Shown here piece after piece: positions 2,920 to 38,500 of a DNA stretch of 64,000 nucleotides. The DNA comes from Auanema rhodensis (taxonomy: Eukaryota > Animalia > Nematoda). A program made the position numbers and the translations under genes. Position 1 is the stretch's first letter, and each line of letters opens with the position of its first letter. Location of the stretch: positions 16,430,001 to 16,494,000 of the forward strand of contig OZ059894.1 in assembly GCA_964057225.1 (NCBI GenBank), written 5' to 3'. Under the pieces are notes generated by a model that was not told the origin of the DNA, did not search any database, and worked only from the letters and a program-made list of their open reading frames with translations.

Positions 2920-4233
2920 TAGTAAATGTTACTGTGTGTATGAAAGGCTAAATAACCTCACTAATATGGTCCCGTTGTTTAAGGTGTCATTCGGCATATG
3001 ACAGACTATAAAGGGTTACTCGGATAAACTTCTAGACTACTACTACCTGCTATATGACTCTCTGGCTTCAGTTTTTCTTTCTTTCAACATTCTAGTTCAT
3101 TCATCTGGTTCATATATCCATTTACTATAATTTCTTCACAAGAACAGAAACAGGTAGAAGAAATAAGACAGAAATGAAAGAGATGAGAGCGAGGTGTTGA
3201 CTGTTCATGAAATTACAGGTCTAACACGCGATAGCTGTCATATTTCTTAATTCTTAAAGGATATAATGAAGATATAACGGGATATAGTTAACGATAACTA
3301 TATGTTATACGAACTTGGTAACATGATATAAGATCTTATATACTATATCACTCTATATATATCTTTATGATGTATACAACTAATGAACGAATGGCACAAA
3401 TCGTAATGTAAGGGTAAAACATACAGAAGACCTTGACTTATCTGGCCACCTTCGACCCTAATTAACCGTTTAATGAGAAAAAATCATTCAATCTGTATAG
3501 ATTCACTATTCTATTCTTCTTAGAAAACGATACAACACGTTTTACTCTTCACGTAGTGCGATTGAGTTGACCAGCTGACAGATGGTCATCATCATCATCA
3601 TCTTCACTATCGTCGACATCCAAATGAAACCATGTGTGGGAAACATGCCAACAGCACTGTGATGGCTTGGCTTATGGACAACGGAATGACGATGGTGTTG
3701 AAGAAGTTCAATGAAAAACGAAAAAGAATGAGAAAGAGAGAGAGAGGGAGAAGGGAAAGCTGGCATTCTTCTGGCACGAGCACACACACACAGAGCGCCA
3801 GCTGATGATGATGACGTCGTTGTCTGTCTTGTTATGAGGCTGATGATAACGCATAAACCATCAACAAGGACAACAAAGGAAATGAAATAATGAGAAAAGG
3901 CCATACAGTTAGAGAAATTAAAATTTGAAGAAGTAAATCATAGACAATTAATAGATAATTGAATGTAGAAATGATGAGTAATAGCAGAATATATCGTAAG
4001 TAGTGTATTAGATGTGACTGAGTGACTGGCTAAACAGGAACGTAATATCTCTAACGGTTTTTCGACTACATGATTGCCAGCAATTACATTTCTATGTTGT
4101 AGAATTAACTATTAGATAATGACTAAAACCATGAATACAAAGAATATACTAGATAATCATATACATCTCAGATTCTTCGTTGAATGTCAATTAGCGCATT
4201 TTTTTGATGAAAAAAAAACGAAATAGAACTAAC

Positions 4234-5414
4234 CTTATGTGTTTTACAAGTTGTTGTTAAAGATTGAACATCATGGTTAGCATGTCGAATATCTTGAAGA
4301 CATAGACAGCAAACAGGCTGTTTACAAGCTAGACAATACATAGATAACAGTTCAGAATGGTGAGAATTGCAATGAGCTTCTCGATTAACTGCTTGAGATG
4401 ACTTCCGTGATCTAGAAAATGTATTAATGAATAGTAAAATCATTTGAAAATGAATAGATAATACCTGCTAGTTGCTGGAATTAGAATGTGCTTGGCTAAT
4501 GGACCACGAGATGGATGAAGTGTTGTTTGGCATTCATTACAATAGTAAATATCACATTGTTCACAGAAGGTCGTGGCTGCTCGAACAACTTCTTCACAAA
4601 GCTGAAACAGAAATTTCATTAAAATATGCAAGTTTAAAGCAATAACTGACTTGACAATTAGGATCGCTCACAGGCTGATCTGTTGTCTTTGGAGCTAGAT
4701 GAGGGTGAGTACTGAGATAGCGAGTTATAACATTCATCATTGCAATGTTTGGTGGAGCTGTTAATATAGCGGATTCATCAGCAAAATATGTTGATTTTTG
4801 ACAAATTCCTATATAATTAAGAAAATTTTATACTAAAACAGTGAAAAAAAGAGAAATATACCGCATTGAAGATGAGCAGCATTCGTTGAAGGAGTGAGAA
4901 TACTACGCATTCGGAATTGTGAAGGACCAATGATTGAAGAGGGTCGGGAAACTAAAAAAAAGAAAACGGAAATGAAAATACAAAAAACAAATTATTTAAA
5001 AGAAAGTTACCTCGTCCATTACATACTACAACTCCTGAATCTGTTTCTGATAGTACAGATAGCTTGTCACTTTCATGATCAGGATCAGAAATACATACAG
5101 AAATAGTATCAGAAGCCCCACTACTGCATTGAGGGGACAGAGGGGATGAACTAAGAATATGGGAAAATAGTGATGGTGTTGAAGCACCGTGTTGATTAGC
5201 TGGAGTAGTAGGTCGTGGAGATGCCACTGTTGAGGTACTTGAAGCCGATGAAGAACATGGTTGAAAAACCTTTAAAAAAACGGGAAAACTAAAAAGAGTT
5301 AGAGAATTAACATACCTTGAGAGCACAGCATCGGCAATAACTGTGGCCACAATTAAGGAGGATAGGATCCTCGAAGAATTTTCGACAAAACGAGCACTTT
5401 AACTCTTCTTCCAT
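4234..5414 (-). CDS. madd-2: TRIM9/TRIM67-family RING/B-box E3 ligase (MADD-2 orthologue), 5' partial; coiled-coil/COS/FN3/SPRY exons lie beyond the left edge
   Basis: Exons read by eye with GT-AG borders: 5316-5414 (MEEELKCSFCRKFFEDPILLNCGHSYCRCCALK), 5011-5269 (Ser-rich insert incl. DKLSVLSETDSGV), 4862-4951, 4651-4808 (last RING CxxC 'CGIC'), 4465-4601 (B-box1 CQLCE...CEQCDIYYCNECQTTLHPSRGPLAKH), 4234-4411 (B-box2 CNSHHSELLSMYCLACKQPVCCLCLQDIRHANH). The MEEELKC start and a RING split by a long Ser-rich insert are TRIM9/MADD-2 hallmarks. No further exon recognised in 1-4233. Confidence 0.93.
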
Positions 5415-23535: not shown

Positions 23536-26500
23536 TCATACATACCATTCTTTAAAATCTTTTTTCTTAATGACACCGCCATTTTTAGAATTTCCATTCA
23601 TCATCGATCGTCCATTTCCGTTCATTCCGTTCACACCATTCATGCCGTTCATACCATTTGGTATAACAGCTCCTTTCAATGGCTGATATCCATTTCCATT
23701 GACCTGAACAATCGAATGAATGCTTCTTCTTTAATGGAAATATTGCTTATCATACCTGTGGTTGTCTGCCTAGCAATGGTTGAGTTGATGGATCGACTCC
23801 TAACGGTGGTGAAAGATCTGGAGCTATTGCTGTATATCCTGACGGTGCTTTGACTCCATTAACAGCCTATCAAATCAAAATGTATTTGAACATCTATTAT
23901 GCATAGTAGTTATTGCTATCATAAGACTACTATCAGTTGAAACATACCATGGGATAATGGTCATTAGGAGGAGGATTCTGACGGCAGCGGAATACACAAA
24001 ATACTACAATTGCTATCAGAAGAACGACTGTTAATGATGCAATCATCACAAGAGCTGTACGAGGAAATTCCCCAGCTTCAGCAGTATTGTACTGAAAATA
24101 CGTGATTTAGCTATTGATGATAAATAGTTTTAGCATTGCAATTCGCTTATAAACCCCTTTATTTTACTTTTTTTATAATATTTATTTTTAAAATTATATA
24201 ATAAATTTATAATTATTATAATAACATATGCTAATTTACAATTTCTTTAACCCACTCCCTAATCAAAAGTTTTTCAAATTTGTACTGATATATGTTATTA
24301 ATTTTTTAATATAATATTAATATTTTATAAAGAATTAACTATATACTTTTACAAAGTATAAGTATTTTATTATTTAATAATCTTTAAAATATTTATTCAA
24401 ACTATTTACTTATTATTTCTTTCTCAAATAGCAATTGCTTAACCATCTCTTCATTTTCAATATGAAAAAGAAAGAGTAAGAGATAATAAGAGAGAGAAAG
24501 AGAGTAAAAGAGAGAAAAAGAGAGAGAGAGAGAGAGAGTAAAAGAGAGAGAAAGAGAGAGAGAGAGAGATTTGAAAATATTTTTTTTGGGAAGAAAGAGA
24601 TTGTTTTATGCTTTCTATATATATTATATATCTATGTATGTATTATAAATACTATACATATGTATATGTATATATGCTTCTAAGATGACTATTTGACAAT
24701 AACAGCCCCAAAAAACATATAATTGGAGATGCTTTTATATGATTTTTGAAATAGAAAACGGTGTAATCGTACCTTCATTGTTGTTGTGAGCAATTCGCCC
24801 ATAGGCGTCGTAGGCCTGACAGGATAAACTGTGAACGACGGAGTCGTTTTAGGCTTAGCTAGACGAGTTGTAGTTGTAGATATAAGTGTTGAAAATGTTA
24901 ATGAACTAGTAGCTTTATCTGAAAAAAAGAAAATTTAATATTAAAATAATATTATTGATTAATTGATTGATTAAATGATAAATGCTTTTGGGTGAACCAT
25001 ACACATAAAGTATTCTTAGTTATCTTCACGTACAAGCTATACACACAGATACACGTACACACTTAAAACTTAAAACTTATAAAGCAACATGAGCTCACTA
25101 AAGCTGATGAAGAGTGAGCAATAACATGCTTTTTCAAAACTTCTTTTAGTCTATTTAACTATTGAGAGAATAAATGAGGAAAAACGACAATAAGAGGATG
25201 ACTATGAACAAAAGGGAGGAGAATGGAAATTCATATAATCATCTTTAGATGAAAAAAAAAGAAAAGTTGTTTTCAACTTTTTGGCTGAATATGAAGAAAT
25301 AGCTGCAAATGGTGGAAAACCCTCTATATATCTTTCTCTTCTCACGCACAAAGAGAAGGAGAGGTAATGAGAGAGATGACGAAGCATTGAATAAGATGAA
25401 CAGAGAGAGAGAGAGAGAAAGAAATCGTTCAAAAAGTAAAATATTTGATTTATGATTCTAGTTTTAATTTGTATTTGTTTATTTATATTTATGTAAATTA
25501 GAAAGTTTGAGATTAAATATACCTTATAAGGTAAATGTTCAAAAATGATTTTCTTCTCTTTTTTTTTTGCTTATCTTGCACGTCAATACATTTCTCATGA
25601 AATATTTGAATTATTAAGTATTATTTTGTGTAAAAATGTAATGAAAAGATCTAATATCATTATTCTTTTTTTTCTTTTTTCTTCTTTTTTTTTGTCAGCA
25701 AATGTGCGAAAAAATTTTCAATAAGTAATATCATGTGCATGAAGCACATACATATGGGAAACGGTCGAGAACAAAAGTTTGAACAATTGCACTTTTCCTA
25801 ACGATATTGCCAGCAAAAAAGCAATTTAAGAGCTAAAATAGGAGAAGAAGAAGAAGATAGAAAATGAGTGAGGCGAGTAATGGTGTTGGAATCTTTGTTG
25901 GTACTCTCACAGCTGCATTGAGATCAGAATAGATGTAACATGTATTTCTATGAATATGAGGTTTGATCTCAAAACTATATTCAGAATATGTATAATATAT
26001 TCTAAAACTTTAAATTATATTAATTATATGTATATAAATAAATAAAAGAAAAAGAAAAGATAATAGTCAATGAACTATTCACTAGTTAACTCTAAGCTAA
26101 CAGGGATCTGTCTTGTTTCGCAAGCAATATTTGCCATCTGGTTAATATGGCTTCACTATTGCTTGCCAACTGATATGGCATTTCATTTACGTCTCATCAA
26201 TATTTTCTTTCACTTTGGCTTTAACAACGAATTTGGTGATAGTTTAAAAAGGATAGCTGTCGTTAAGGAGCTTAAGAAAGCCATCGGAAATCACAAAAAA
26301 AGTGTGAAGCATGCCTTGCTAAAGACAGGAAATAAAATCAATTTTTTTTGGAAAAAAAGAAATGAAATTGCTTGCAATAAGAAATAGTTCTTAAACTCTT
26401 GATGTTGTGGTGGTCTTACTACCCCATGTGCTCAAGCTTCAAGTTTAAATCAAGGCTTAGTTGAAGCAATCATGCGGTGAGTTCACGAATATATACTACA

Positions 26501-29500
26501 TGGTTCATTGCAATTTTAAAAGAAATGCGGAAAAAAGAGAAATGCAGAATCAGAATACTGGAAGCAGAATGAAAAGACAACCATAAAAATGAACAAAATA
26601 ATGTTATTTAGTTGACATCAAAATAGAAACACAAATTGAAACTTTGCATGATGTTGTCTTTGCTCAAACTGCCTAGATGCTCGATGTGTTAGCATTGTAG
26701 CCAAGCGTCAAAAGTCTGACCAATAAGCCAAACCAGATGGCATAAGCAGGAGCACGAGGATAAACGAGTAGAGACTTTGGTTCAGGACAGCTCTAGCGTT
26801 TGGAAGAGGCAGATGAGCTAGAGGCTAAACGGAAGCAGAACCCAGCATGCATAGCACTGCCAGAGGTCTTTGCTCTCTCTATCCTTCTCTCTCTTCCTTT
26901 CTATAAATCCTTTCAATGTTCTCTTTCTCTCTATATGTCCCTATATTTTCTTTTTCTACCTCTTGCTCTTCTTCTCTCTTTGAATCTCTGGGTGACAAGC
27001 AGAATGAGGACGATGCTAATTAATAGAAGAAATATTGGTTCTGAAGGCTGAAGCACTTTCTGCCAATTCTCATTAAATAAACGGACCAGCAGCACCCAAC
27101 TGATTGTGTGTCATGTTATTTTAAAAAATAATAAATTTCAAGTACAAGGCATATACCTTGATATCCAAAAGAAAAAACATGCGAAAGCGCGTTGGCCTTT
27201 CATTCTATTGAGCAACTTTCGTTATAAATTTTGCCAAATAAAGTTTTAAATGTAAAACTTGGCGTGGAGTCAATGCGTTAAGTACGGAAATTATAACATC
27301 TTGTTCAATTTTATATATTCTGCTTCAAAATCAATAAAATTCGATATGCAAATTTGTCAAAAGAAAAGTTGGAATAAAGTAGTGTGTTGCTAAAAAAAAA
27401 AGCTTAGAAACTATTTTTATGAAAAATTGATATGATCAGAAAAGAATAATTCTCTTATTCTATGACTAATTTTAAAAATTTAATTAGAAAGATATGATTA
27501 GAATAATGAGAATAGTGAGAATATTTACGTGAAACGTGATTATATTATTCACGTGTAATCGAAAAAAATAATATTATTTTAATTTTCATTGAATAAGAGA
27601 ACGGTTGTTTTAATTTTTTTTTAAAAACTTATATTGATTATATATATAGTATACTATACTATATATATAATTGTTAAAAGAAAAGGAAATATTCAACTTC
27701 TTATACATATAATATGATTAGGCAGCTGATATTGAATACATTTCGATATCTAGCTAAACTACTGCTTAATGGAAAAATCAATTTGATTATGAGTTTTAAT
27801 GAGTTGGCAGCACCACGCAAAGTTTGAGTTTATAGGGGAAAAAGTTGGAGAAAAAGAAGTAAATGAAAGGAAAAGAAAGACAAAAGTTGAGATGAAAAGA
27901 ATGTTATGAATGAATGAGTTAATAAACTATCAAATATAATGTTACTAAAAAAGATTAAACTATATATTATTTATAATAATAATAATAATAATAATAATAA
28001 AATCAAACTATGAAAGGATTAGATAGTAGTTTAACGGTGCATACAACAAAAAAAATTTTTTGTTGCTCCGCTACTTCATTCAAAAATGCATAAGCTACTA
28101 GATCTCCGATGAAAGACGGAGAGATTGCTTATTAAGAACAGAACTTAAACGACACAGCAGACTGCCAAACAGGAAAAGCCCTATTCACACAAAATGTCAG
28201 ACAAGGTAGTCATATGGGCCAGATGAACCACAGTTTGACGACTTATAATTGGTGATCGATGGTGCTGAAGCATTTGATTGGCTGTGTGCTCTCTCTTTCT
28301 CTCTCTCCCTAGGAGGTAGCTGGGCTGGCTCTGAACTTTTACGTCTTTCTGCCATATTTCACGCCGCCAATGCCCTCAGATTATACTTGAATTGCAAAAG
28401 ATTACATTAGGAATTTTCCTTTTTTTCCTGATTACTTGTAAGTTCACAGAATGCAGGGAAAGAGGATTTGTAAAAGATTGATCCAAAAGAAGAGGAGATC
28501 AAGAAACATTTCAATTGCCTATATGACAGTATAACAAAAAAAAAGGATTGAACAAGGAAGTTAAAATTGAAGAATCTTCAAATTATCAAAATAATGATAC
28601 TGAATTGAGTTTTGAGGGAAGCACACACGATGGCAGTTGGCCAAAATAAAGTTTTGTTGTTGATAAAAGGTTGATTATAAGCATGCCAAGCATATTACAT
28701 ATGTTTGTAAACTGAAATTCAAATTTGACATGAACGTTATGGTAAAACCGGACAGGACAGACACAGCAAGACTTGAAATACAGACTTAATACTTGGAAAA
28801 ACACATTTTAGATGGTCTTCATACGTATTAAATGAACAAATAGAACAGTTCTGATAGATGAATCAAGATAGAGGAGCTTGGCAACGACAGGTCGACTGAT
28901 GACGACTCGACACACAGCAAACAAAACACCGCTAAACGGATAACACAGTTATAGTAAATCCTGTATAGCACTAGACGTTCAGACCTGAACACTCGACGGA
29001 ATCAGAAAAGCAACAGAAAACTGGGTAAGCTCAGAGGGTACTGGAAGAAACTCGTAAGGATGCTTCAAAATAATACAAGCAATAAGAGGTTAAACCCAGG
29101 AAGCAAGCATCACACGCAGAATAAAGAAGATATATACCAACCCGTGAGACTTTTGAACGGCGACATCTTCGTTTGACTAGCAGTTGTTGTTGCTGGCACA
29201 CTAGTTGTCGTAGTCTTCCGTCGATGATGTACTGACGTAGTTGACACAGTGGTTGTGATTGGTCTAGGCACCATTTGAGTTGTTCGACTGCCAGTAAGCG
29301 AACTGTTCTTGCTCGGACGCCAAGCAGGTCCAGTTACCATTGGCTCCGGAAGCAAGTCTATGTCGGCCCATATACTGTCGCCTAGATATTCAGGATTCTG
29401 TTCAGCTGCAGCACTAACACTTTCATATGGTCTTGGTAAAACTGTGACACGTGTAGATGCTCTGGTAGTTTGGATGTTAGGAGAAACTGTGCTGTTTTTA

Positions 29501-32500
29501 GACGTCGGGCGCCCGACGGGTGCGTGATGGCCCGGAAGCCGTGCGTCTGATCCGAGTTGCGACACGTGTTGCCGCGAATCTGAACCCGGTCGAGCATGTG
29601 GAGCCTGAGGCGCGATGGGATGTGGTGGCATCACAGTGGGGAGAGATTTCGGTGCCGTGGTGCGTCTGGCTTGAGTGGCTGCAGTTGTCGAAAGTGGCGA
29701 CAAAGTTGAATCTATATCGGATGCTTCTGTGCCTTCGATAGAGGAGAGATATATAATAGAAGGAGGAGTTAAAGGTGAAGAGCTACTAGTAGTGGAATAA
29801 GAAGAAGATTTAAAATCAGAAGAACTATAAGAAGGTGGTGGGACTGGTCGTGAGACGACGGAAGTTCGGGTAGAATCTGCAGACTTTCTAGGAGACTCAC
29901 CACGAACTGCAGAGGATGGTGGATTATTAGTAGTAGCACGTCGAGGAGCAGTAACCGCGGACGGAATCACTGGAATGAAGAAGCCTGCAAGAAAATAGAT
30001 TAGATGTTTTTGTCAAAGTTGAAAGAAAATATTTTAATATTTTTTCTCTTTTTAGCTTTTTGTTCGAAAAAAGAATGCATCATCATGTATTTTTCAGGAT
30101 GTATCGAACCGGAATCAGAATAATCTTCGTGAGACTGATAATCTTCTTGGCTGCTCCCGTGGAACGACATCGAATTCATACGATTTCGAGTAGCATCCAA
30201 ACGACTCGAATCGAAATTTGGAGCAAATCGTGGAGGTGGCGGAGCATTCAGACGACATTTTGGAGAGTTCCAATCCATCAAACAGAGGATTGGTAACACT
30301 GTGCTTGTCATCACAATCATCCATAGGGGCGGGTCCTGTGTATTTACATGACATAATCAAACAGATCATATTCTCATTAAGAGAAAGAAGTACGTGTTGA
30401 ATAATTCTATTTGGAACAATGAACATGAAACATTGGCATTTGGTTAACACAGAGAGCAAAGAGAAAGGATCAAATTTCTAATAGTTTGAGTTCAAATTGG
30501 AAGGTGGTTAGTAGATAGCAATATAGCCTTCAGAAATCTCATCTATCAAGTTTCGGGATGGAAAGAAATAAAAAAATAGAAAAAAGGCTCAACAAAAGGA
30601 ATAAACTGAACATGGATACATGAATATACAGCATGTATATGATCATATGAGGAAAATTGGGGTTAGATGAGCAATTTGAAGACATCGACTACATAGATAC
30701 TACTATTACTTACAATACATCGAAAGGATATTATAAGGTTTTATAAGAAAGAGGAAATGACCTTCATTTCAAGCAAAAACAAGGTATAGTATAGAAAATT
30801 TTCTAAACATATACATATATATATATATATATATATATTTTACTATGTTTCGATATAATATATTATAAAAGAATAATATTAAGTAAAGGGTTGGAAACGA
30901 GGTAATAGCAGAGTTTGAGATTGCTGATTTTGAAAAAAAAAAGAATAATCTTTTCATACAAAAATTGTTTATATGTAAACATAATATACTAATATATACT
31001 ATATAGTTTAAAAAAAAGGAAAAAATAACATCAGCTTGAAAAAAAAGTAAAATAGGAATAGATCAATGAGTATTGCAAGAAAATAATCTGAGAATGTGAG
31101 AAAAGCACATATTGCCTTGTTTCTTTCATTATATTGGAAAGAGTCAAAGAAAATGAAAGATATTTGGAGGGATGAAAGTTGAAAGTTGCTTATGAGTAGA
31201 TATTTGAAAATTATATGGAAAAATGAATAAAATTTGGAATAACGAAGACACAAAAATGAAGATGATGGCATGGCTTGTGACTGAGAAGAGCAATATTTCA
31301 AAAAGTTTTTAGATGAAATTAATTAGAATTACAATTAAAATAATAATTGAAACTTCTTTACATGAGTTTCTCGAAGAAACAATAGATATGAACAAGAGTT
31401 CGTTAAGTTGCCAAATAAAAAAAATATAATTAAAATGGAAAAGTAAGTGAAAGGATAAGAAAATCAGAGATGACTATGTTAATTAGATATGCACTAATAT
31501 AATTCCTTTCTGCCATCAAAGTTTTAAAAAGTTTTGAAAATAAGGAAAAAGAGAAGAAGGATAGATGTATTCCAAACAATTTCTGGAAACGAATTCTCAA
31601 GGAAAACAAGGAAGAGGTTTCAGATGTGAAACATGCTCTCTGGTGAAAGAAGGAAAAAAGAAAAAGAGAAAACATGAAGAATGACGAATAACTTGGTAAA
31701 TGAAGTACAAAGTTGATACTTTATCAACTAAACTTAAAGCTTGCGCTAGTTGTGCTCCATGATGAACGTTATGGTATTGGAGAGAGAGGGGAAGAACAAT
31801 AGATGAGCATTAGACTAATCATGACTTATATAAGATTTTCATAGTTAAAGAGTGCGAATATAAATATGACTATAGTTAACTATGTGCTTCTCTTGAGAAT
31901 GAATGAAAATAGAGAGGGGAAGAGAGAAAAAGAGACAAATAGAGAGAGAGAGAGAGAGAAAGAGAGGGAGAGAATAGGTCTTAAGGCCTTTATAGGAAGT
32001 GAGCTCTTCACAGTTATGCAAGGTTATGAATCCAGATGGCGCAACTGTTTGATTTTCAGTTCTTCATCTATTCTATCTCTTCCTATTCTCATGGCCTCTT
32101 AGCTGTAGAGATATCAAGGAAACGGCTCATCCCTCCCTCTCCCCCATCTTCGTCATCAACTAAAATACACGAAGGACAAAGCAAGTGTCGATAGCTAGCA
32201 AGCATGTGCTGACCAAAAGGGTTGTCTCACACTCTATTCCTTGATGTACGCCCCAGCTTGCTACTATCGACTTCCAGATTCTTAGCAAATTCAATCATTC
32301 CGACGACAAAACAATTTTTGAGCTCACGATGGCAGGAAAGACGACCAAATACTTTTTCTTAGTATAACGTATATATCAAGAGCTCAGATTATATATATAT
32401 ATAGTATATAACATATAGATAGATGTATGGATCAAGGTTATTTCGTAAACGAACAGTATGACACGTTCAGTCAAGCTGTTGCTTTTGAAAAACAAGTTTC

Positions 32501-35500
32501 TTTTTTTCATATAAATGATAGTAAATTAGCTGTCAACGAGCTGTCCAAGTAACAAAATAAACAGACAGACAAGACAAATATTGAAATTTCAGAATAAAAA
32601 GAAGAATGAAAGGAAAGATGGATATAGAACTATATTCTTTATTATAAAATGTCCGGAATTGAAGTATATGGTTTATATAATTCTCATATACCATCAAGTT
32701 CTCAAACGTTTCGTGGCGAAGGGCAAATAGAGCAAACTAGAAAGAAACGTAATGTTTTCGTGTACTTGGCATGTAAGCCGTCAAATATCTAAAATAGACA
32801 GGAAGGAAGAAATGTTGTTAAGATTGTTCCAAAAGCTTAGGTTCTTCCTTCTATTCAGCTTTGCTGTATGGAAGTCTCATCTTCATTGCAACGTCAGGCT
32901 CTCTGATTGAATTGGCGCACAACCGTTGCGAAGCTATTCAGCCGAAATTCTGTCATGAATCATGTACTTCTTTTCAACTATTCATCCTTATGTGTAATAG
33001 AGTGACAAGGTTGACGACATCAAAATTTGGAAGAAATGGAAAGAAGAATCATTCGTACAAGTACATACATCGACACGTTTCTAATCAAAGAGCATTTGTA
33101 GGAGAGAACATGAAAGCTAATTTCACAAACCAAATGATCAGAAAGTTCTAAAAGAGTGGAATAGTCAATGGGGAATATGTAAACGAGTTCAAACAGTGAT
33201 ATTGATGAGAAGAGAAGTTCATAATCTTCGAAATAAGACAAATTGTAGTTAGATGAATGAATATGTTAAACATATACCAAACATCGCTCTATGTCTCGAA
33301 CATTTGGAAAAGTCAAAAAGTAGATATACGAGTAGGCTCGACAAGATGCCAAACCGAAAGTAAGAGAGAGAAGGAAATAGATAGATAGATAGATAGATAG
33401 ATAGACGTCATTCCTGGATTCGGAAATAACCGCATTGGGTGCGATCTGGTGAGCTGTCTTCTGCTAAGACAACAGGCACAGCCCCCAAGAGACAGATTGG
33501 CCTTTCGAATCAAGAGTCTTGTATTCTAAGAGAAAGCTCTTAGTTTCATCTTCATCTTTTTCTATATCTCTCCAGATGCATTACTCTTTGGTAGACATTT
33601 GTCATTTTTCTTGCTAAGTTATTCCAAAAACCGTTTATAGCATGGACGTTTCGGAAGAATCATGCCCAAAAGAAAAGATATTGACAGATCATGCTGTAAG
33701 CTTAAGCAAGTGCCAAAAAGACGAAATTTCTCTAATAAGTATAGCTCATGAATCGATTACACATCACCAATTCTTTTTTCTACTTCAACATTTGAAGCTA
33801 ATGCTTATTAAGATCTAAAGAGAATGTGTGTGAAGTGAAGTAAATAAGATATTTTCAAGAAGAGCTCAAGTCCAAAAACATTTATTTATTTCAAAAATCC
33901 AAAGAAGGAAAACGATTAGAAGCACCAATCTTAAACATTAATTCATTATGTTAGTACTTCTTCAAATTCGAAAGAATTGAAATGTTGCCAAGAGAAAAAT
34001 AAATTTAATTTTAAATAATAATAACAATAATTATAATTATAGTAATCTATAAATATAAAAAATCAATTCAAATGTAGTATAGAATAATCATATCCAAAGA
34101 AATATTATCTATCGTGTTATCTTTCTGCATGACGGACTACATGCGGATATGCTGATATTAGTTGTCTACAATCATGAATTTGACATCTTCAAAATCGTGG
34201 ATATGTCCCGATAAGATGAAGAAAAGTTTCAAATATAAAGATATAAACAATAATAATCTTGAAGAAGTTATATAGCTATTATTACTAATATAACTGATAT
34301 GTAACATATCTTTTTTCATTTTCATAAATCGTAATTTACTTAAGATGAAAGTTATTGTAAACAGCCAATTGATCTACGAAATTATTTTTTGCAAATTGGC
34401 TGAACCAACTGAAAAGGAAGCGAATTCATGGAAAATGGGTGGGTATTGGCATCGATACATGAAGAGTTGCAAGAAAAAAGGATGAAAAGCAAAAGAAAAT
34501 CCGTGAGTATGATACATATATGTGTCAAGTTGTTTAATCATCTGAATACCAGTTTGGTGGGTTAGTGAGAAGAGCAATACATACATTAACATGTACAAAC
34601 CACGTTTAGAGCTTATATAGAAAGAGAAAAAAAGAAGAGCTTGGCCAAAAGAGTTAGACAGGCAGACCTGCGCTTCTTTGACAAGCAACAACATGGCTGT
34701 GATTGCTGGTCTTTAGAGCTTGTCAAGCTACTTGGAGAAATTGAACACCTAGAGATTTAGTGGAAATGTGTCTTTTTCCCAGTCAAATGCATATACACAT
34801 ACATATAGACAACGTCCACTAAAATCGCAATCCAATGCATGTCTCTTCATTTTGCTCGTTTTCAATTACATAGTAAATGCTGAATAAGCGAGAAACCATA
34901 CAAATAGGTTAGTAATGTGAATCAAAAAAAAAAGGAAAAACATTAATTGTTAATTTCTTTCTCTTTTTTTTTGGAAATCCAAGACAAAAAATATGAAGCG
35001 ATAGTGAAATGAAATATTGGAATATTATAAGGATAAAATGATGGCAAAATTTGCTCAAGAAACTTTTAAGATGTGTCTGGATTTGAATCGAAAAAAAGGT
35101 CATTTTGAACATTTTTTTGAGAAGAAAAAAACAATAACGAAGTGAAAAAAGAAAGTTATTGTGTTTAAGATATACTTGCAACTGCAATTGCATGATCGGA
35201 GAGAAAAAAATTAGACAAAAAAGAAACGTGTAGGACAATTGAGCTCAATTGAGCGTAAAGTTGTTTGACGCTCTGAGCATATTCAGGAAGAAAACGAAAA
35301 CGAAGACTAGCTAAGGTTGTGAAGATTAGTTGCTTCTTATTACGCAGCAGTGGCGCCTTTTCATTATAAAAAGATAAATCGGTGGATTAAGTGAATGTCA
35401 AAAGAGAACCTCATACTAACTTCAGCTGAGCACAGAACTTGAAATTGAAAAATGCAATACAAGAAATTAAAAATGGTAATATTTGATAAAAACCAAAAAA

Positions 35501-38500
35501 AACTGGAATGCAACTGCTTTGTGTGTCGTAATGATCAGAATTAAAAACATCTTCTTTCATAGAACATCTTAACATCCTTCAATGAAAGAAGAAATGATTT
35601 TGCTCAATCGAGTTACGATTAAGAAAAGCTTTTTATGGAGGAACATGACAACACAGGTGGCTTACACTGGATAAAGTAGTTGTGAATGCTAAGATGACAA
35701 CAAAACCTTTTGCACATGTGAGATAAAACCAACAAATTTCTATTCTGGACACTTGAAATAATAGCAGTGAAAGAGCTTCTCCTCAATTATTTGTCAGAAG
35801 GTCAGTGGAGCAGAAGAAGATGGTCATTGAAATAATACCTGAATAGTGTATTATCCTTCAAAACTCGTTACTTTCTTCAATCATTACTACTGCTTAACTA
35901 TGGAAAATATAGTAAGTGAAGCCATATAGAACAACACCATTGGCTTCAAAGCCAACCAGGCCCGTGTAAATCATAAAAAGTTTAATCAGTTGGATGCTAT
36001 TGATAAAATAAAATTTTCTAGAATGTCGTCTAAAACTTCCCAATATTATCTTGAATGAGAGCAAATCTCATGTGTATTTATCCAAATTCGATAATTTTTT
36101 CGACAATTTGCAGCATATCTATATCAAAAAGACTCAATTTAGTACTAATTCTAGAAAAACTTGTATTGTAAAGGACATTTAACTATATATTAAACATAAC
36201 AAAAAATATTAAAAATATAATAATAAATTCTCAATAGAATTATAATATTCAAATTAACTTATAAGTATATAGTTAAATATAATTTATTAATATATAGTTA
36301 ATTGGAGTTAAAATTTTAAAATATAATGATAATCAAAACAAATAATTTTATGAAGAAGACAAGAAAAAAGAAAATTTTTTTTCTTCAATTTTTGTCATAT
36401 TGTTTTATGATATTCAACTGATCATAAACCAACAACTTCTCACGCACAATATCTCAAAATGAAATAAAATTATTTAAAATGTGAAGGATAAGTGAGACGG
36501 GGCTAGTAAGATATACAAGAAGTTCAAGAAATTATGCCCCAGAGATGGTACCACATGTGACAAGTGGTCAGTTCATGAATAATGTTTTTAAGAAAGCTAT
36601 TTTAAAAATTGTTTTTAGTGATGTTCAAAAAACATATTTAAGTAGTTAGCTCATAAGAAAATCAGAAAAAAATAAAGTTCCTAAATTCTTCTTTAATAAC
36701 TAAATTGTATTCACATTGTATTATGTGTATATAAGATTCAGTCAAAAGCATGCACATAGCGTAACTATAGGTGAAATTACAAATTCAAGAATCTAATCTG
36801 AAAATATTAATATTTGAATTTGGAAGCATAGATTATGAGCAATGATGCATGTTGCTTTCCTCCAAAAAAACCAAAAGAAATATAATTATCACAGTTGCAT
36901 AGCTACTCTCAAAGTTTGTTAGAATCCACTCAAAATTCAGGAATTGCAACATTGCAGCATAAAAACTAATAGGACAAGATATATTTTGTTTCGAAGCCGA
37001 AGAAAGAAATAATAAAAAGTCAAAGAATATGAAATCAACTTCCGATTGATAAGTTGATGTGTATGCATATAATAGATTTGCTATCAAAAATAGTTTTAGT
37101 AATATACTCAATATCATTCGATTCGATGATTTCTAATACAATGATGACACCTTTTCTTTTTTGTTTTTATTTATTGTTTTATATATTAATAGATAAAAAT
37201 AACATTTTTTCATATCAAAACTAACCTGAATGTTCCGTTTCAACATAGCAACTATCATGTTCTTCTACTGTTAAGCAAGCGGCACCGAGCGACTCTATTA
37301 GGGCGTCAGCAGAATTCTGAAAAAAAAACAATTATTATTATTATATTATGATATAATAAATAATTTGTTCTCAGGTAATAGTAATTTGTTGCAGTAAAAT
37401 GCATTTAAAAGTTTTATAATATTGAAAGAATATATAGAATATGTCAGACGGATATTTTTGAATAAAAGTAAAAGCAAACAAATAACTGCAGAAATTTAAT
37501 ATTTCAAAATCACATAATGCGAGAAAAGAAAAAAAAATAGAAGCAAAAGTTGAGGTGACGACTTCACAGCCATACTGAAAGTGGCCACAAAAGCTGGATA
37601 GCCTCTATGGAATTGCTATCATTCAACACGAAAAGGCAATAGAGCACAACAAAACTTGACATTTATCAAGATAAAAATGTTGAAAATCTGATTTGAAACG
37701 AAGATTTTTACCAATGTGACGAAAAAAAATTTTTTGGTCTTCCTCTACTTTTCTTTGTTTTAATATTTAGCTGTACTTTACATCTTTTATGAATTTGAAG
37801 AGAAATTGTTAATGATTTCGAAACTCATTTCATATTCGGAATATGGAAGGTACAGAGTTCGAGAAGAAAAACAAAAAATATTTTCGATTTAGCTTTCAAA
37901 TTAATTTCTTCAAGATAAAAAAACAATGAGCTTACGTCCATTCCTTCCTGCATCATTTCTTCACTTGGCTGCTCAACAGGAGGAGATTCGTGAACTTTCT
38001 TAACAGATCCAATAGCAAATACACGTGGCGATCCTAAATAATTAAATATAACTATATTAATTATATTATCATATTAATATATAATAATAAAATCAAATGT
38101 TCAAGAAAAATAGGGGAAAATGGATTATGAGGACATTAACAATACTTTAGTTTCCAGATTAAAGTAAATGATCAAACATCTTTTCATGAATGAGAGGTAT
38201 AATTTACGTAATATAGAAAATCATGACGATAATAATATGATGAAGCTTATTATATTTAACATTTGAATATGCTATACATAATATTATTATTATTATTATT
38301 ATTTTAACATACATGACATATAATTTAGATATATATTTATATATATATATAGGCATATTGAATATTATATAAAATGATTATGATAATCAATAAAGTAAGC
38401 TATATGATTTAAACAATTTTGATTCGTAAATTATAATATTATATTGCACTAACTATATTATACTTTATCATCAAAAGAAGAAATAAAAGTTATATAGCAT

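What the first reader, a model, noticed from the sequence alone, without database searches (positions are those of the whole stretch)
30110..37316. Two phase-identical Cys-loop exons (both C-L-x7-C) that cannot be spliced together in frame
Seen: exon A (37226-37316) encodes AA-CLTVEEHDSC-YV and exon B (30110-30335) encodes IL-CLMDWNSPKC-RL. Both are phase 0-1 and both end S|G before GFFIPV, so direct A-B joining shifts the frame. Inference: B is either mutually exclusive with A in alpha-neurexin or belongs to a gamma-type isoform, and may be an old duplicate of A. Known: the vertebrate Cys-loop binds CA10/CA11 and lies next to the heparan-sulfate site, so swapping loops could switch partners.
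Basis: partly seen in the sequence, partly recalled or inferred. Interest (0 to 1): 0.7.

Follow-up and report, generated by a model that had tools for sequence, protein, structure and literature searches.

The report
First exon of short (gamma) neurexin
The second "Cys-loop exon" is the start exon of the short, gamma-type form of a roundworm neurexin gene, as already annotated in C. elegans. It carries a very strongly conserved two-cysteine motif that I found described in none of the papers read.

Summary
Spliced transcript contigs from four public runs join exon A (37316-37226) directly to the stalk exon C (29984-29142). In two runs they also join exon B (30335-30110) to C, and a third run covers B.

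No contig links B to any upstream exon. B contigs stop at or just past the AG acceptor at 30337/30336, with at most 5 unmatched letters.

B frame 1 is under strong purifying selection: 11-14 third-position changes and 0-1 residue changes over 23 codons. Relatives have in-frame stops, or leaders whose lengths differ by other than multiples of three, upstream of the ATG. The same N-terminus heads complete short neurexins in C. elegans, Ancylostoma and Acrobeloides.

So B is the first coding exon of the gamma/short isoform, made from an internal start and probably SL1 trans-spliced. It is not an alternative cassette of alpha-neurexin. Profile comparison finds no homology between A and B.

The C-x8-C spacing with an invariant Trp holds in all full-length relatives across nematode clades III-V. 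Whether it is a retained disulfide loop or part of a signal sequence is open. This is a known kind, with a modestly new motif.

The parts
37226..37316 (-). Exon A: the canonical stalk/Cys-loop exon of the long (alpha) form. It has an ALIES motif followed by an acidic C-x8-C loop (Cys codons 37277-37275 and 37250-37248).
   Evidence: Translation. Splice sites. A-to-C junction in contigs of all four runs (loose end at 29987). Orthologues aligned.
30338..37225 (-). 6.9-kb intron of the long form. It is inferred to hold the internal promoter and outron of the short form.
   Evidence: No transcript contig lies on 30450-35049. The promoter itself was not mapped, so this is inference.
30336..30337 (-). 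AG acceptor in front of exon B, probably a trans-splice site.
   Evidence: B contigs end at 30333 (X1), at 30337 plus 5 unmatched letters (X2) and at 30337 plus 2 (X3). CAG|G is conserved in three of four species. The genome holds about 1,258 SL1 copies.
30110..30335 (-). Exon B: first coding exon of the short (gamma-type) isoform. It has a 15-nt leader and then an ATG at 30320-30318. The ATG conserved across species is at 30311-30309.
30210..30311 (-). Conserved gamma-specific motif, residues 4-37 of the exon-B product. It includes the C-x8-C pair (Cys codons 30284-30282 and 30257-30255), an invariant Trp, and a PxP[KR]FA[PS]N block.
   Evidence: Invariant among strongylids. Conserved in 23 sequences from clades III-V. 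Substitutions are synonymous-only. AlphaFold pLDDT is 75-86 over residues 11-50.
29985..30109 (-). 125-nt GT..AG intron between exon B and exon C.
   Evidence: Joint seen in contigs of X1 and X2.
29142..29984 (-). Exon C: mucin-like stalk exon shared by both forms, starting GFFIPV. It has an alternative donor at 29901/29900.
   Evidence: The orthologous block is present in L003 and L004.
23539..24106 (-). Shared 3' end: the transmembrane exon (24106-23936) and cytoplasmic exons ending in the PDZ-binding KEWYV and stop.
   Evidence: The same tail is present in P0042, P0044 and P0055.

Best explanation
Exon B is the first coding exon of the short, gamma-type neurexin isoform. Transcription starts inside the 6.9-kb intron that follows the Cys-loop exon A. 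The primary transcript is processed at the AG at 30337/30336, most likely by SL1 trans-splicing (inferred). Translation starts at the ATG 15 nt (or 24 nt) into the exon. The 70 gamma-specific residues are spliced to the stalk exon C, which the long form reaches directly from exon A. A and B therefore never meet in one mRNA. They are alternative neighbours of exon C through alternative promoters, not through cassette choice. The equal phase in this species is a coincidence of leader length. The gamma-specific peptide carries a very conserved hydrophobic segment with two cysteines eight residues apart and an invariant tryptophan. I rate it about even whether this is a retained, disulfide-stapled mini-domain that stands in for the alpha Cys-loop, or the core of an ER-targeting signal.
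For: Shown by transcripts: B-to-C and A-to-C junctions; no contig anywhere in the intron; and B contigs ending at the acceptor in three runs at three slightly different points, which fits fading coverage at an mRNA end rather than a graph branch. Shown by comparison: frame 1 of B has 11-14 third-position differences and 0-1 residue changes in 23 codons between four species. Stops lie upstream of the ATG in L004 and L006. Leaders measure 24, 25, 25 and 38 nt. The A-to-B frame hits TGA at once in Haemonchus placei. Complete short neurexins begin with this motif: C. elegans P0042, Ancylostoma ceylanicum P0044, Acrobeloides P0055, C. bovis P0028. The order A, B, C is kept in L004. The literature reports that C. 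elegans long and short NRX-1 come from distinct promoters and that the short form predominates (PMC10680821, PMC12414531). For SL1: the contigs match the genome through AG but not the preceding c, as expected for ...GAG and not for exon A's ...CAG, and SL1 genes are abundant.
Against: The few unmatched letters in front of B could not be read, so the leader is not identified and no promoter is mapped. The runs are only guessed to be RNA by their record, although the spliced contigs argue for it. Contigs drop rare forms, so a minor alpha+B transcript cannot be excluded. In this species the frame from the acceptor to the ATG is open. Two database gene models (Heterorhabditis P0009, Meloidogyne P0037) fuse an A-like loop to B, though these look like prediction artefacts.
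Confidence: 0.88

Rival explanations
1. B is a cassette exon used instead of A inside alpha-neurexin (mutually exclusive splicing), swapping one Cys-loop for another in the long protein.
For: In this species both exons are 3n+1 long. The frame from the B acceptor is open, so a join from the exon ending at 37936 would be in frame.
Against: No contig joins B to an upstream exon. The letters before B in two runs are AG, not the AC that ends the 37936 exon. Relatives have stops or frame-breaking leader lengths upstream of the ATG.
Confidence: 0.03
2. B is included after A as a frame-shifting 'poison' or truncating exon. This would give a soluble neurexin ending at TGA 30117-30115, like the stop-containing inserts at vertebrate splice site 5 (recalled from memory, not checked).
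For: The shifted frame stays open for nearly the whole exon, 120 codons from 30477 to 30118.
Against: No A-to-B junction is seen. The shifted frame is not conserved and stops after 7 codons in H. placei. Substitutions fit frame 1 only.
Confidence: 0.03
3. On the role of the cysteines only: the hydrophobic start of the exon-B product is an ordinary cleaved signal peptide. The first cysteine is then removed and no loop exists in the mature protein, so the likeness to A is chance.
For: The motif sits at the very N-terminus in strongylids and Acrobeloides. Its 8-residue core has a mean hydropathy of 2.9. Several relatives have basic residues before it. A source names two orthologues 'Secreted protein'. 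A mucin-like ectodomain of several hundred residues needs ER entry.
Against: The core with its Pro and Cys, and the polar stretch after it, are nearly invariant across three nematode clades, which is unusual for signal peptides. By my own reading of the residues there is no small-residue -3/-1 cleavage site. AlphaFold places residues 11-50 in one moderately confident unit. C. bovis, C. elegans and Meloidogyne models carry 17-30 mostly polar residues before it.
Confidence: 0.45

Closest known systems
C. elegans NRX-1 short isoforms (called beta in 2011, gamma since 2018), e.g. the 287-residue protein P0042
   Same: Same gene position and the same splice into the GFF..P stalk exon. The N-terminal motif is orthologous, with C-x8-C, Trp and the [KR]FA[PS]N block. 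The transmembrane segment and KEWYV tail are the same, and the short-stalk variant is shared too.
   Different: Here the motif begins 3 residues after the first ATG, whereas C. elegans has 17 residues before it. The linker after the motif is unrelated in sequence. This species' stalk is longer.
Vertebrate neurexin Cys-loop domain (binds CA10/CA11 and FAM19A; next to the heparan-sulfate serine)
   Same: Exon A resembles it. Its L-I two and three places before a Ser matches the vertebrate L-V, and an acidic loop between two cysteines follows (PMC8024894). Exon B shares only a cysteine pair of similar spacing. FAM19A binding is reported to need the loop but not its sequence (PMC7480106).
   Different: The vertebrate loop has nine residues and lies next to the membrane, so vertebrate gamma keeps it. 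In nematodes loop A lies upstream of the mucin stalk and of the gamma start, so gamma loses it. Loop B is not acidic and lacks the L-V/Ser element.
Vertebrate Nrxn1-gamma (internal promoter, no LNS or EGF domains)
   Same: Internal start, a short isoform-specific N-terminus, and a shared stalk, membrane span and PDZ-binding tail (PMC7480106, PMC8024894).
   Different: No sequence relation was tested between the two gamma-specific N-termini. The vertebrate form retains the canonical loop and the heparan-sulfate site.

Membership tests
Nematode short (gamma-type) NRX-1 isoform, first coding exon | Lies inside the neurexin gene, downstream of the last LNS and Cys-loop exons and upstream of the shared stalk exon | tested here: met
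   Laminin G exons at 50.5-44.5 kb. The order is A 37.3 kb, B 30.3 kb, C 29.9 kb, with the tail at 23.5 kb.
Nematode short (gamma-type) NRX-1 isoform, first coding exon | Spliced to the shared stalk exon in mRNA | tested here: met
   B-to-C joint in contigs of two runs.
Nematode short (gamma-type) NRX-1 isoform, first coding exon | Own 5' end or promoter, not joined to alpha exons | tested here: inconclusive
   No upstream junction is seen and the contigs end at the acceptor. The leader letters could not be read and no promoter is mapped.
Nematode short (gamma-type) NRX-1 isoform, first coding exon | Translation starts in the exon | tested here: met
   Stops and frame-breaking leader lengths lie upstream of the ATG in relatives. 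Annotated proteins start there.
Nematode short (gamma-type) NRX-1 isoform, first coding exon | Sequence orthology to the C. elegans short-isoform N-terminus | tested here: met
   The profile search gave 30 hits. C. elegans P0042 came from the word search with P0028 and aligns with the motif.
Neurexin Cys-loop domain (vertebrate definition) | [quoted passage not shown] | tested here: not met
   This refers to exon B. The cysteines are conserved, but the loop holds Trp, Pro and Lys with one acidic residue. Exon A meets the feature.
Neurexin Cys-loop domain (vertebrate definition) | Leu-Val and the modified Ser just upstream of the first cysteine | tested here: not met
   Absent before loop B. 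Exon A has L-I-E-S five residues before its first Cys.
Neurexin Cys-loop domain (vertebrate definition) | Intramolecular disulfide; covalent binding of CA10 or FAM19A | not testable with these tools
   The AlphaFold output gives secondary structure only. No binding test was run.
Mutually exclusive cassette exons | Each exon is joined to the same upstream and the same downstream exon | tested here: not met
   The downstream exon is shared, but no upstream junction exists for B.
Cleaved N-terminal signal peptide | N-terminal hydrophobic core followed by a small-residue cleavage site | tested here: inconclusive
   The 8-residue core is present. No clear cleavage site was seen by eye. No signal-peptide predictor was available.

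The most novel reading that the evidence does not exclude
Nematode gamma-neurexin is described in the papers read as having no extracellular interaction motif. It may instead carry a private folded mini-domain at its N-terminus: a helix-turn-helix stapled by the C-x8-C pair and packed on the [KR]FA[PS]N block. This would replace the alpha Cys-loop module that the gamma start bypasses, and would give the predominant isoform its own covalent or cis ligand.
Probability: 0.3. Interest if true: 0.6.

Novelty: new member of a known kind. Interest (0 to 1): 0.38.

Why it matters
Short neurexin is reported to be the predominant isoform at C. elegans synapses and to act in behaviour separately from the long form (PMC10680821, PMC10689797). 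Its ectodomain is treated there as featureless. This window shows the same isoform in a parasitic-type roundworm, with transcript support. The comparison shows that its first 35 residues are among the most constrained parts of the whole ectodomain across three nematode clades. That gives a concrete, mutable target (two cysteines and one tryptophan) for asking whether gamma-neurexin has an extracellular partner. For genome annotation, it also explains why many helminth gene sets list this exon as a small orphan 'secreted protein' or fuse it wrongly to the alpha exons.

Tried and rejected
- **Paralogues of B in the own genome:** none by DNA or protein (one search failed on a frame slip that I then corrected).
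- **Pfam:** nothing on B in either frame or on the short proteins, apart from a sub-threshold cadherin-tail match in the cytoplasmic part.
- **Profile-profile comparison of loop A and loop B alignments:** probability 0.2%, one aligned column.
- **Fetching the transcript contig to read the letters before B:** an exact look-up of window:30141-30320:- found nothing on record.
- **C. elegans and Ancylostoma loci:** P0042 and P0044 are not on record, so synteny in those two species was not checked.
- **SL1 inside the window:** none, as expected.
- **Kurshan 2018:** not held in the library.
- **Earlier scan notes on a gamma exon:** none by words.
- I reran it by coordinates only.
- All searches were exon by exon, by reference.
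- **The S|G junction as a glycosaminoglycan site:** rejected as a conserved feature, because the residue before the G varies.
Full report
**What is in the sequence**

The window carries a neurexin gene on the minus strand. Its parts are:
- Laminin G exons between about 50.5 and 44.5 kb.
- A transmembrane exon at 24106-23936.
- A last exon ending in the PDZ-binding KEWYV at 23539.

Each has two cysteines eight residues apart, with Leu after the first. Each is 3n+1 long and hands one G to exon C, which begins GFFIPV at 29984. Joining A to B shifts the frame. The shifted frame happens to stay open until TGA at 30117-30115. B is single-copy in its 181-Mb genome.

**Transcripts**

One run search found four runs of one study that hold 70-84% of the B+C stretch. 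Their record does not say RNA. Laid on 29050-35049, however, their contigs skip GT..AG introns and leave 30450-35049 empty, so they are spliced transcripts.
- All four runs have a contig that leaves exon C at its acceptor and continues with the reverse complement of the 3' end of exon A. This is the A-to-C junction of the long form.
- Runs X1 and X2 also have a contig joining B to C across the 125-nt intron 30109-29985.
- X3 has a contig covering 30140-30337.
- X4 has no B at all.

No contig ties B to anything upstream. The three B contigs end at 30333, at 30337 plus five unmatched letters, and at 30337 plus two unmatched letters. Ends that differ from run to run look like coverage fading at an mRNA end, not like a branch in the assembly graph.

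The two letters before the exon are AG in X2 and X3, and the match stops before the genomic c at 30338.
- The exon ending at 37936 ends in ...AC.
- Exon A ends in ...CAG, which would have matched one letter further.
- The spliced leader SL1 ends in ...GAG and fits.

The genome holds about 1,258 exact SL1 copies with their donor. I could not read the unmatched letters, so SL1 trans-splicing is an inference.

**Which frame is coding, and where it starts**

A word search with exon B found small orphan proteins in Haemonchus placei, Necator, Angiostrongylus and Strongylus. Residues 4-37 of the exon-B product are invariant in them.

I fetched the DNA of three relatives: L003 (H. placei), L004 and L006 (two unnamed nematode contigs). 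Over 23 codons, pairs of species differ at 7-14 third positions and 1-4 first positions. There are no second-position differences and 0-1 residue changes. So frame 1 is under strong protein-level selection.

Upstream of the conserved ATG, the leader is 24 nt here, 25 nt in L003 and L006, and 38 nt in L004. L004 and L006 have in-frame stops there. In H. placei the A-to-B frame stops after seven codons. The piece before the ATG is therefore non-coding, and the equal phase of A and B in this species is accidental. In L004 the order A, B, C and the one-G handover to GFF..P are the same.

**What it corresponds to**

A profile of the motif, run against 1.8 billion representative proteins, gave 30 hits. 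The named hits come from:
- three Caenorhabditis species;
- Mesorhabditis;
- Heterorhabditis;
- Ostertagia;
- Dictyocaulus;
- Bursaphelenchus;
- two Ditylenchus species;
- Meloidogyne;
- Acrobeloides.

A filarial short neurexin (Elaeophora) came from a separate search.

Several hits are complete short neurexins with the same layout: motif, variable linker, GFF..P stalk, membrane span and KEWYV tail. A second word search found the C. elegans proteins.
- P0042 (287 residues, named NRX-1 beta isoform by its source) begins with the orthologue of exon B.
- P0041 (410 residues) begins just before the orthologue of exon A.

The two loops are therefore already annotated in C. elegans as alternative neighbours of the stalk exon.

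The literature agrees. A short form was reported in 2011 (PMC12414531). Long and short forms are driven by distinct promoters, the short form has several splice variants, and it is probably the predominant isoform (PMC10680821). It also has its own behavioural role (PMC10689797). The same source describes its ectodomain as lacking canonical interaction domains.

**Are the two loops related?**

Exon A is the true counterpart of the vertebrate Cys-loop module. Its orthologues keep A-L-I-E-S followed by an acidic C-x8-C. In vertebrates, Leu-Val sits at -3/-2 of the heparan-sulfate serine and an acidic loop follows (PMC8024894).

Exon B has none of this. Its loop holds an invariant Trp, usually a Pro and a basic residue. 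Profile-profile comparison of the two alignments gives probability 0.2%. So nothing supports duplication, although ten residues cannot exclude it. The Ser before the junction G is not conserved in either exon.

**What the motif may do**

In all 21 sequences that include the first cysteine, the spacing is eight residues. The Trp, the second Cys and one Pro are invariant in all 23 sequences.

For a signal sequence:
- The motif is at the very N-terminus in strongylids and Acrobeloides.
- Its core of eight residues is hydrophobic, and some relatives have basic residues before it.
- A source names two orthologues 'Secreted protein'.

Against a plain signal peptide:
- The near-invariance includes a Pro and a Cys inside the core.
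- The polar part after the core is also conserved.
- Several gene models have long polar extensions before the motif.
- AlphaFold, given the 23-sequence alignment, returns one unit with pLDDT 75-86 over residues 11-50. It has a helix on the hydrophobic core, a turn at D-W-N-S, a short helix at the second Cys and a helix at residues 38-50.

I leave this at roughly even odds.

**Verdict**

The thing itself is a new member of a known kind. The conserved gamma-specific motif is the only part that appears undescribed in the papers I could read.

Noticed in passing
window 29142-29984 (minus strand): Exon C has an alternative GTGAGT donor at 29900, joined to the same downstream exon near 24.9 kb in runs X2 and X3. 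An internal GT..AG intron (29899-29381) appears in X3. C. elegans P0042 shows the matching short-stalk form.
   Followed up: partly
G000:C3:6741531-6770267 and beyond (L007, L008): About 1,258 exact copies of SL1 plus its GT donor are in the genome. Those listed lie in a tandem array with a period of about 252 bp.
   Followed up: no
window 30118-30477 (minus strand, other frame): A 120-codon open frame overlaps exon B in the frame that an A-to-B join would use. It is not conserved: it stops at once in H. placei. It looks like a by-product of the G+C-richer coding exon.
   Followed up: yes
runs X1-X4 on window 29050-30337: One of the four samples (X4) has the A-to-C transcript but no contig on exon B at all. 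This suggests that the short form is regulated by stage, sex or tissue. The sample identities are coded.
   Followed up: no
P0009 (Heterorhabditis), P0037 (Meloidogyne incognita), P0001 (Haemonchus placei): Public gene models fuse an A-type loop or an invented mini-exon to the B exon, or list B as a small orphan protein. These are likely annotation artefacts of the internal start.
   Followed up: partly
window 4171-4667 (minus strand): Open frames rich in Cys/His spacing, like B-box or RING zinc fingers, suggest a separate gene downstream of neurexin.
   Followed up: no
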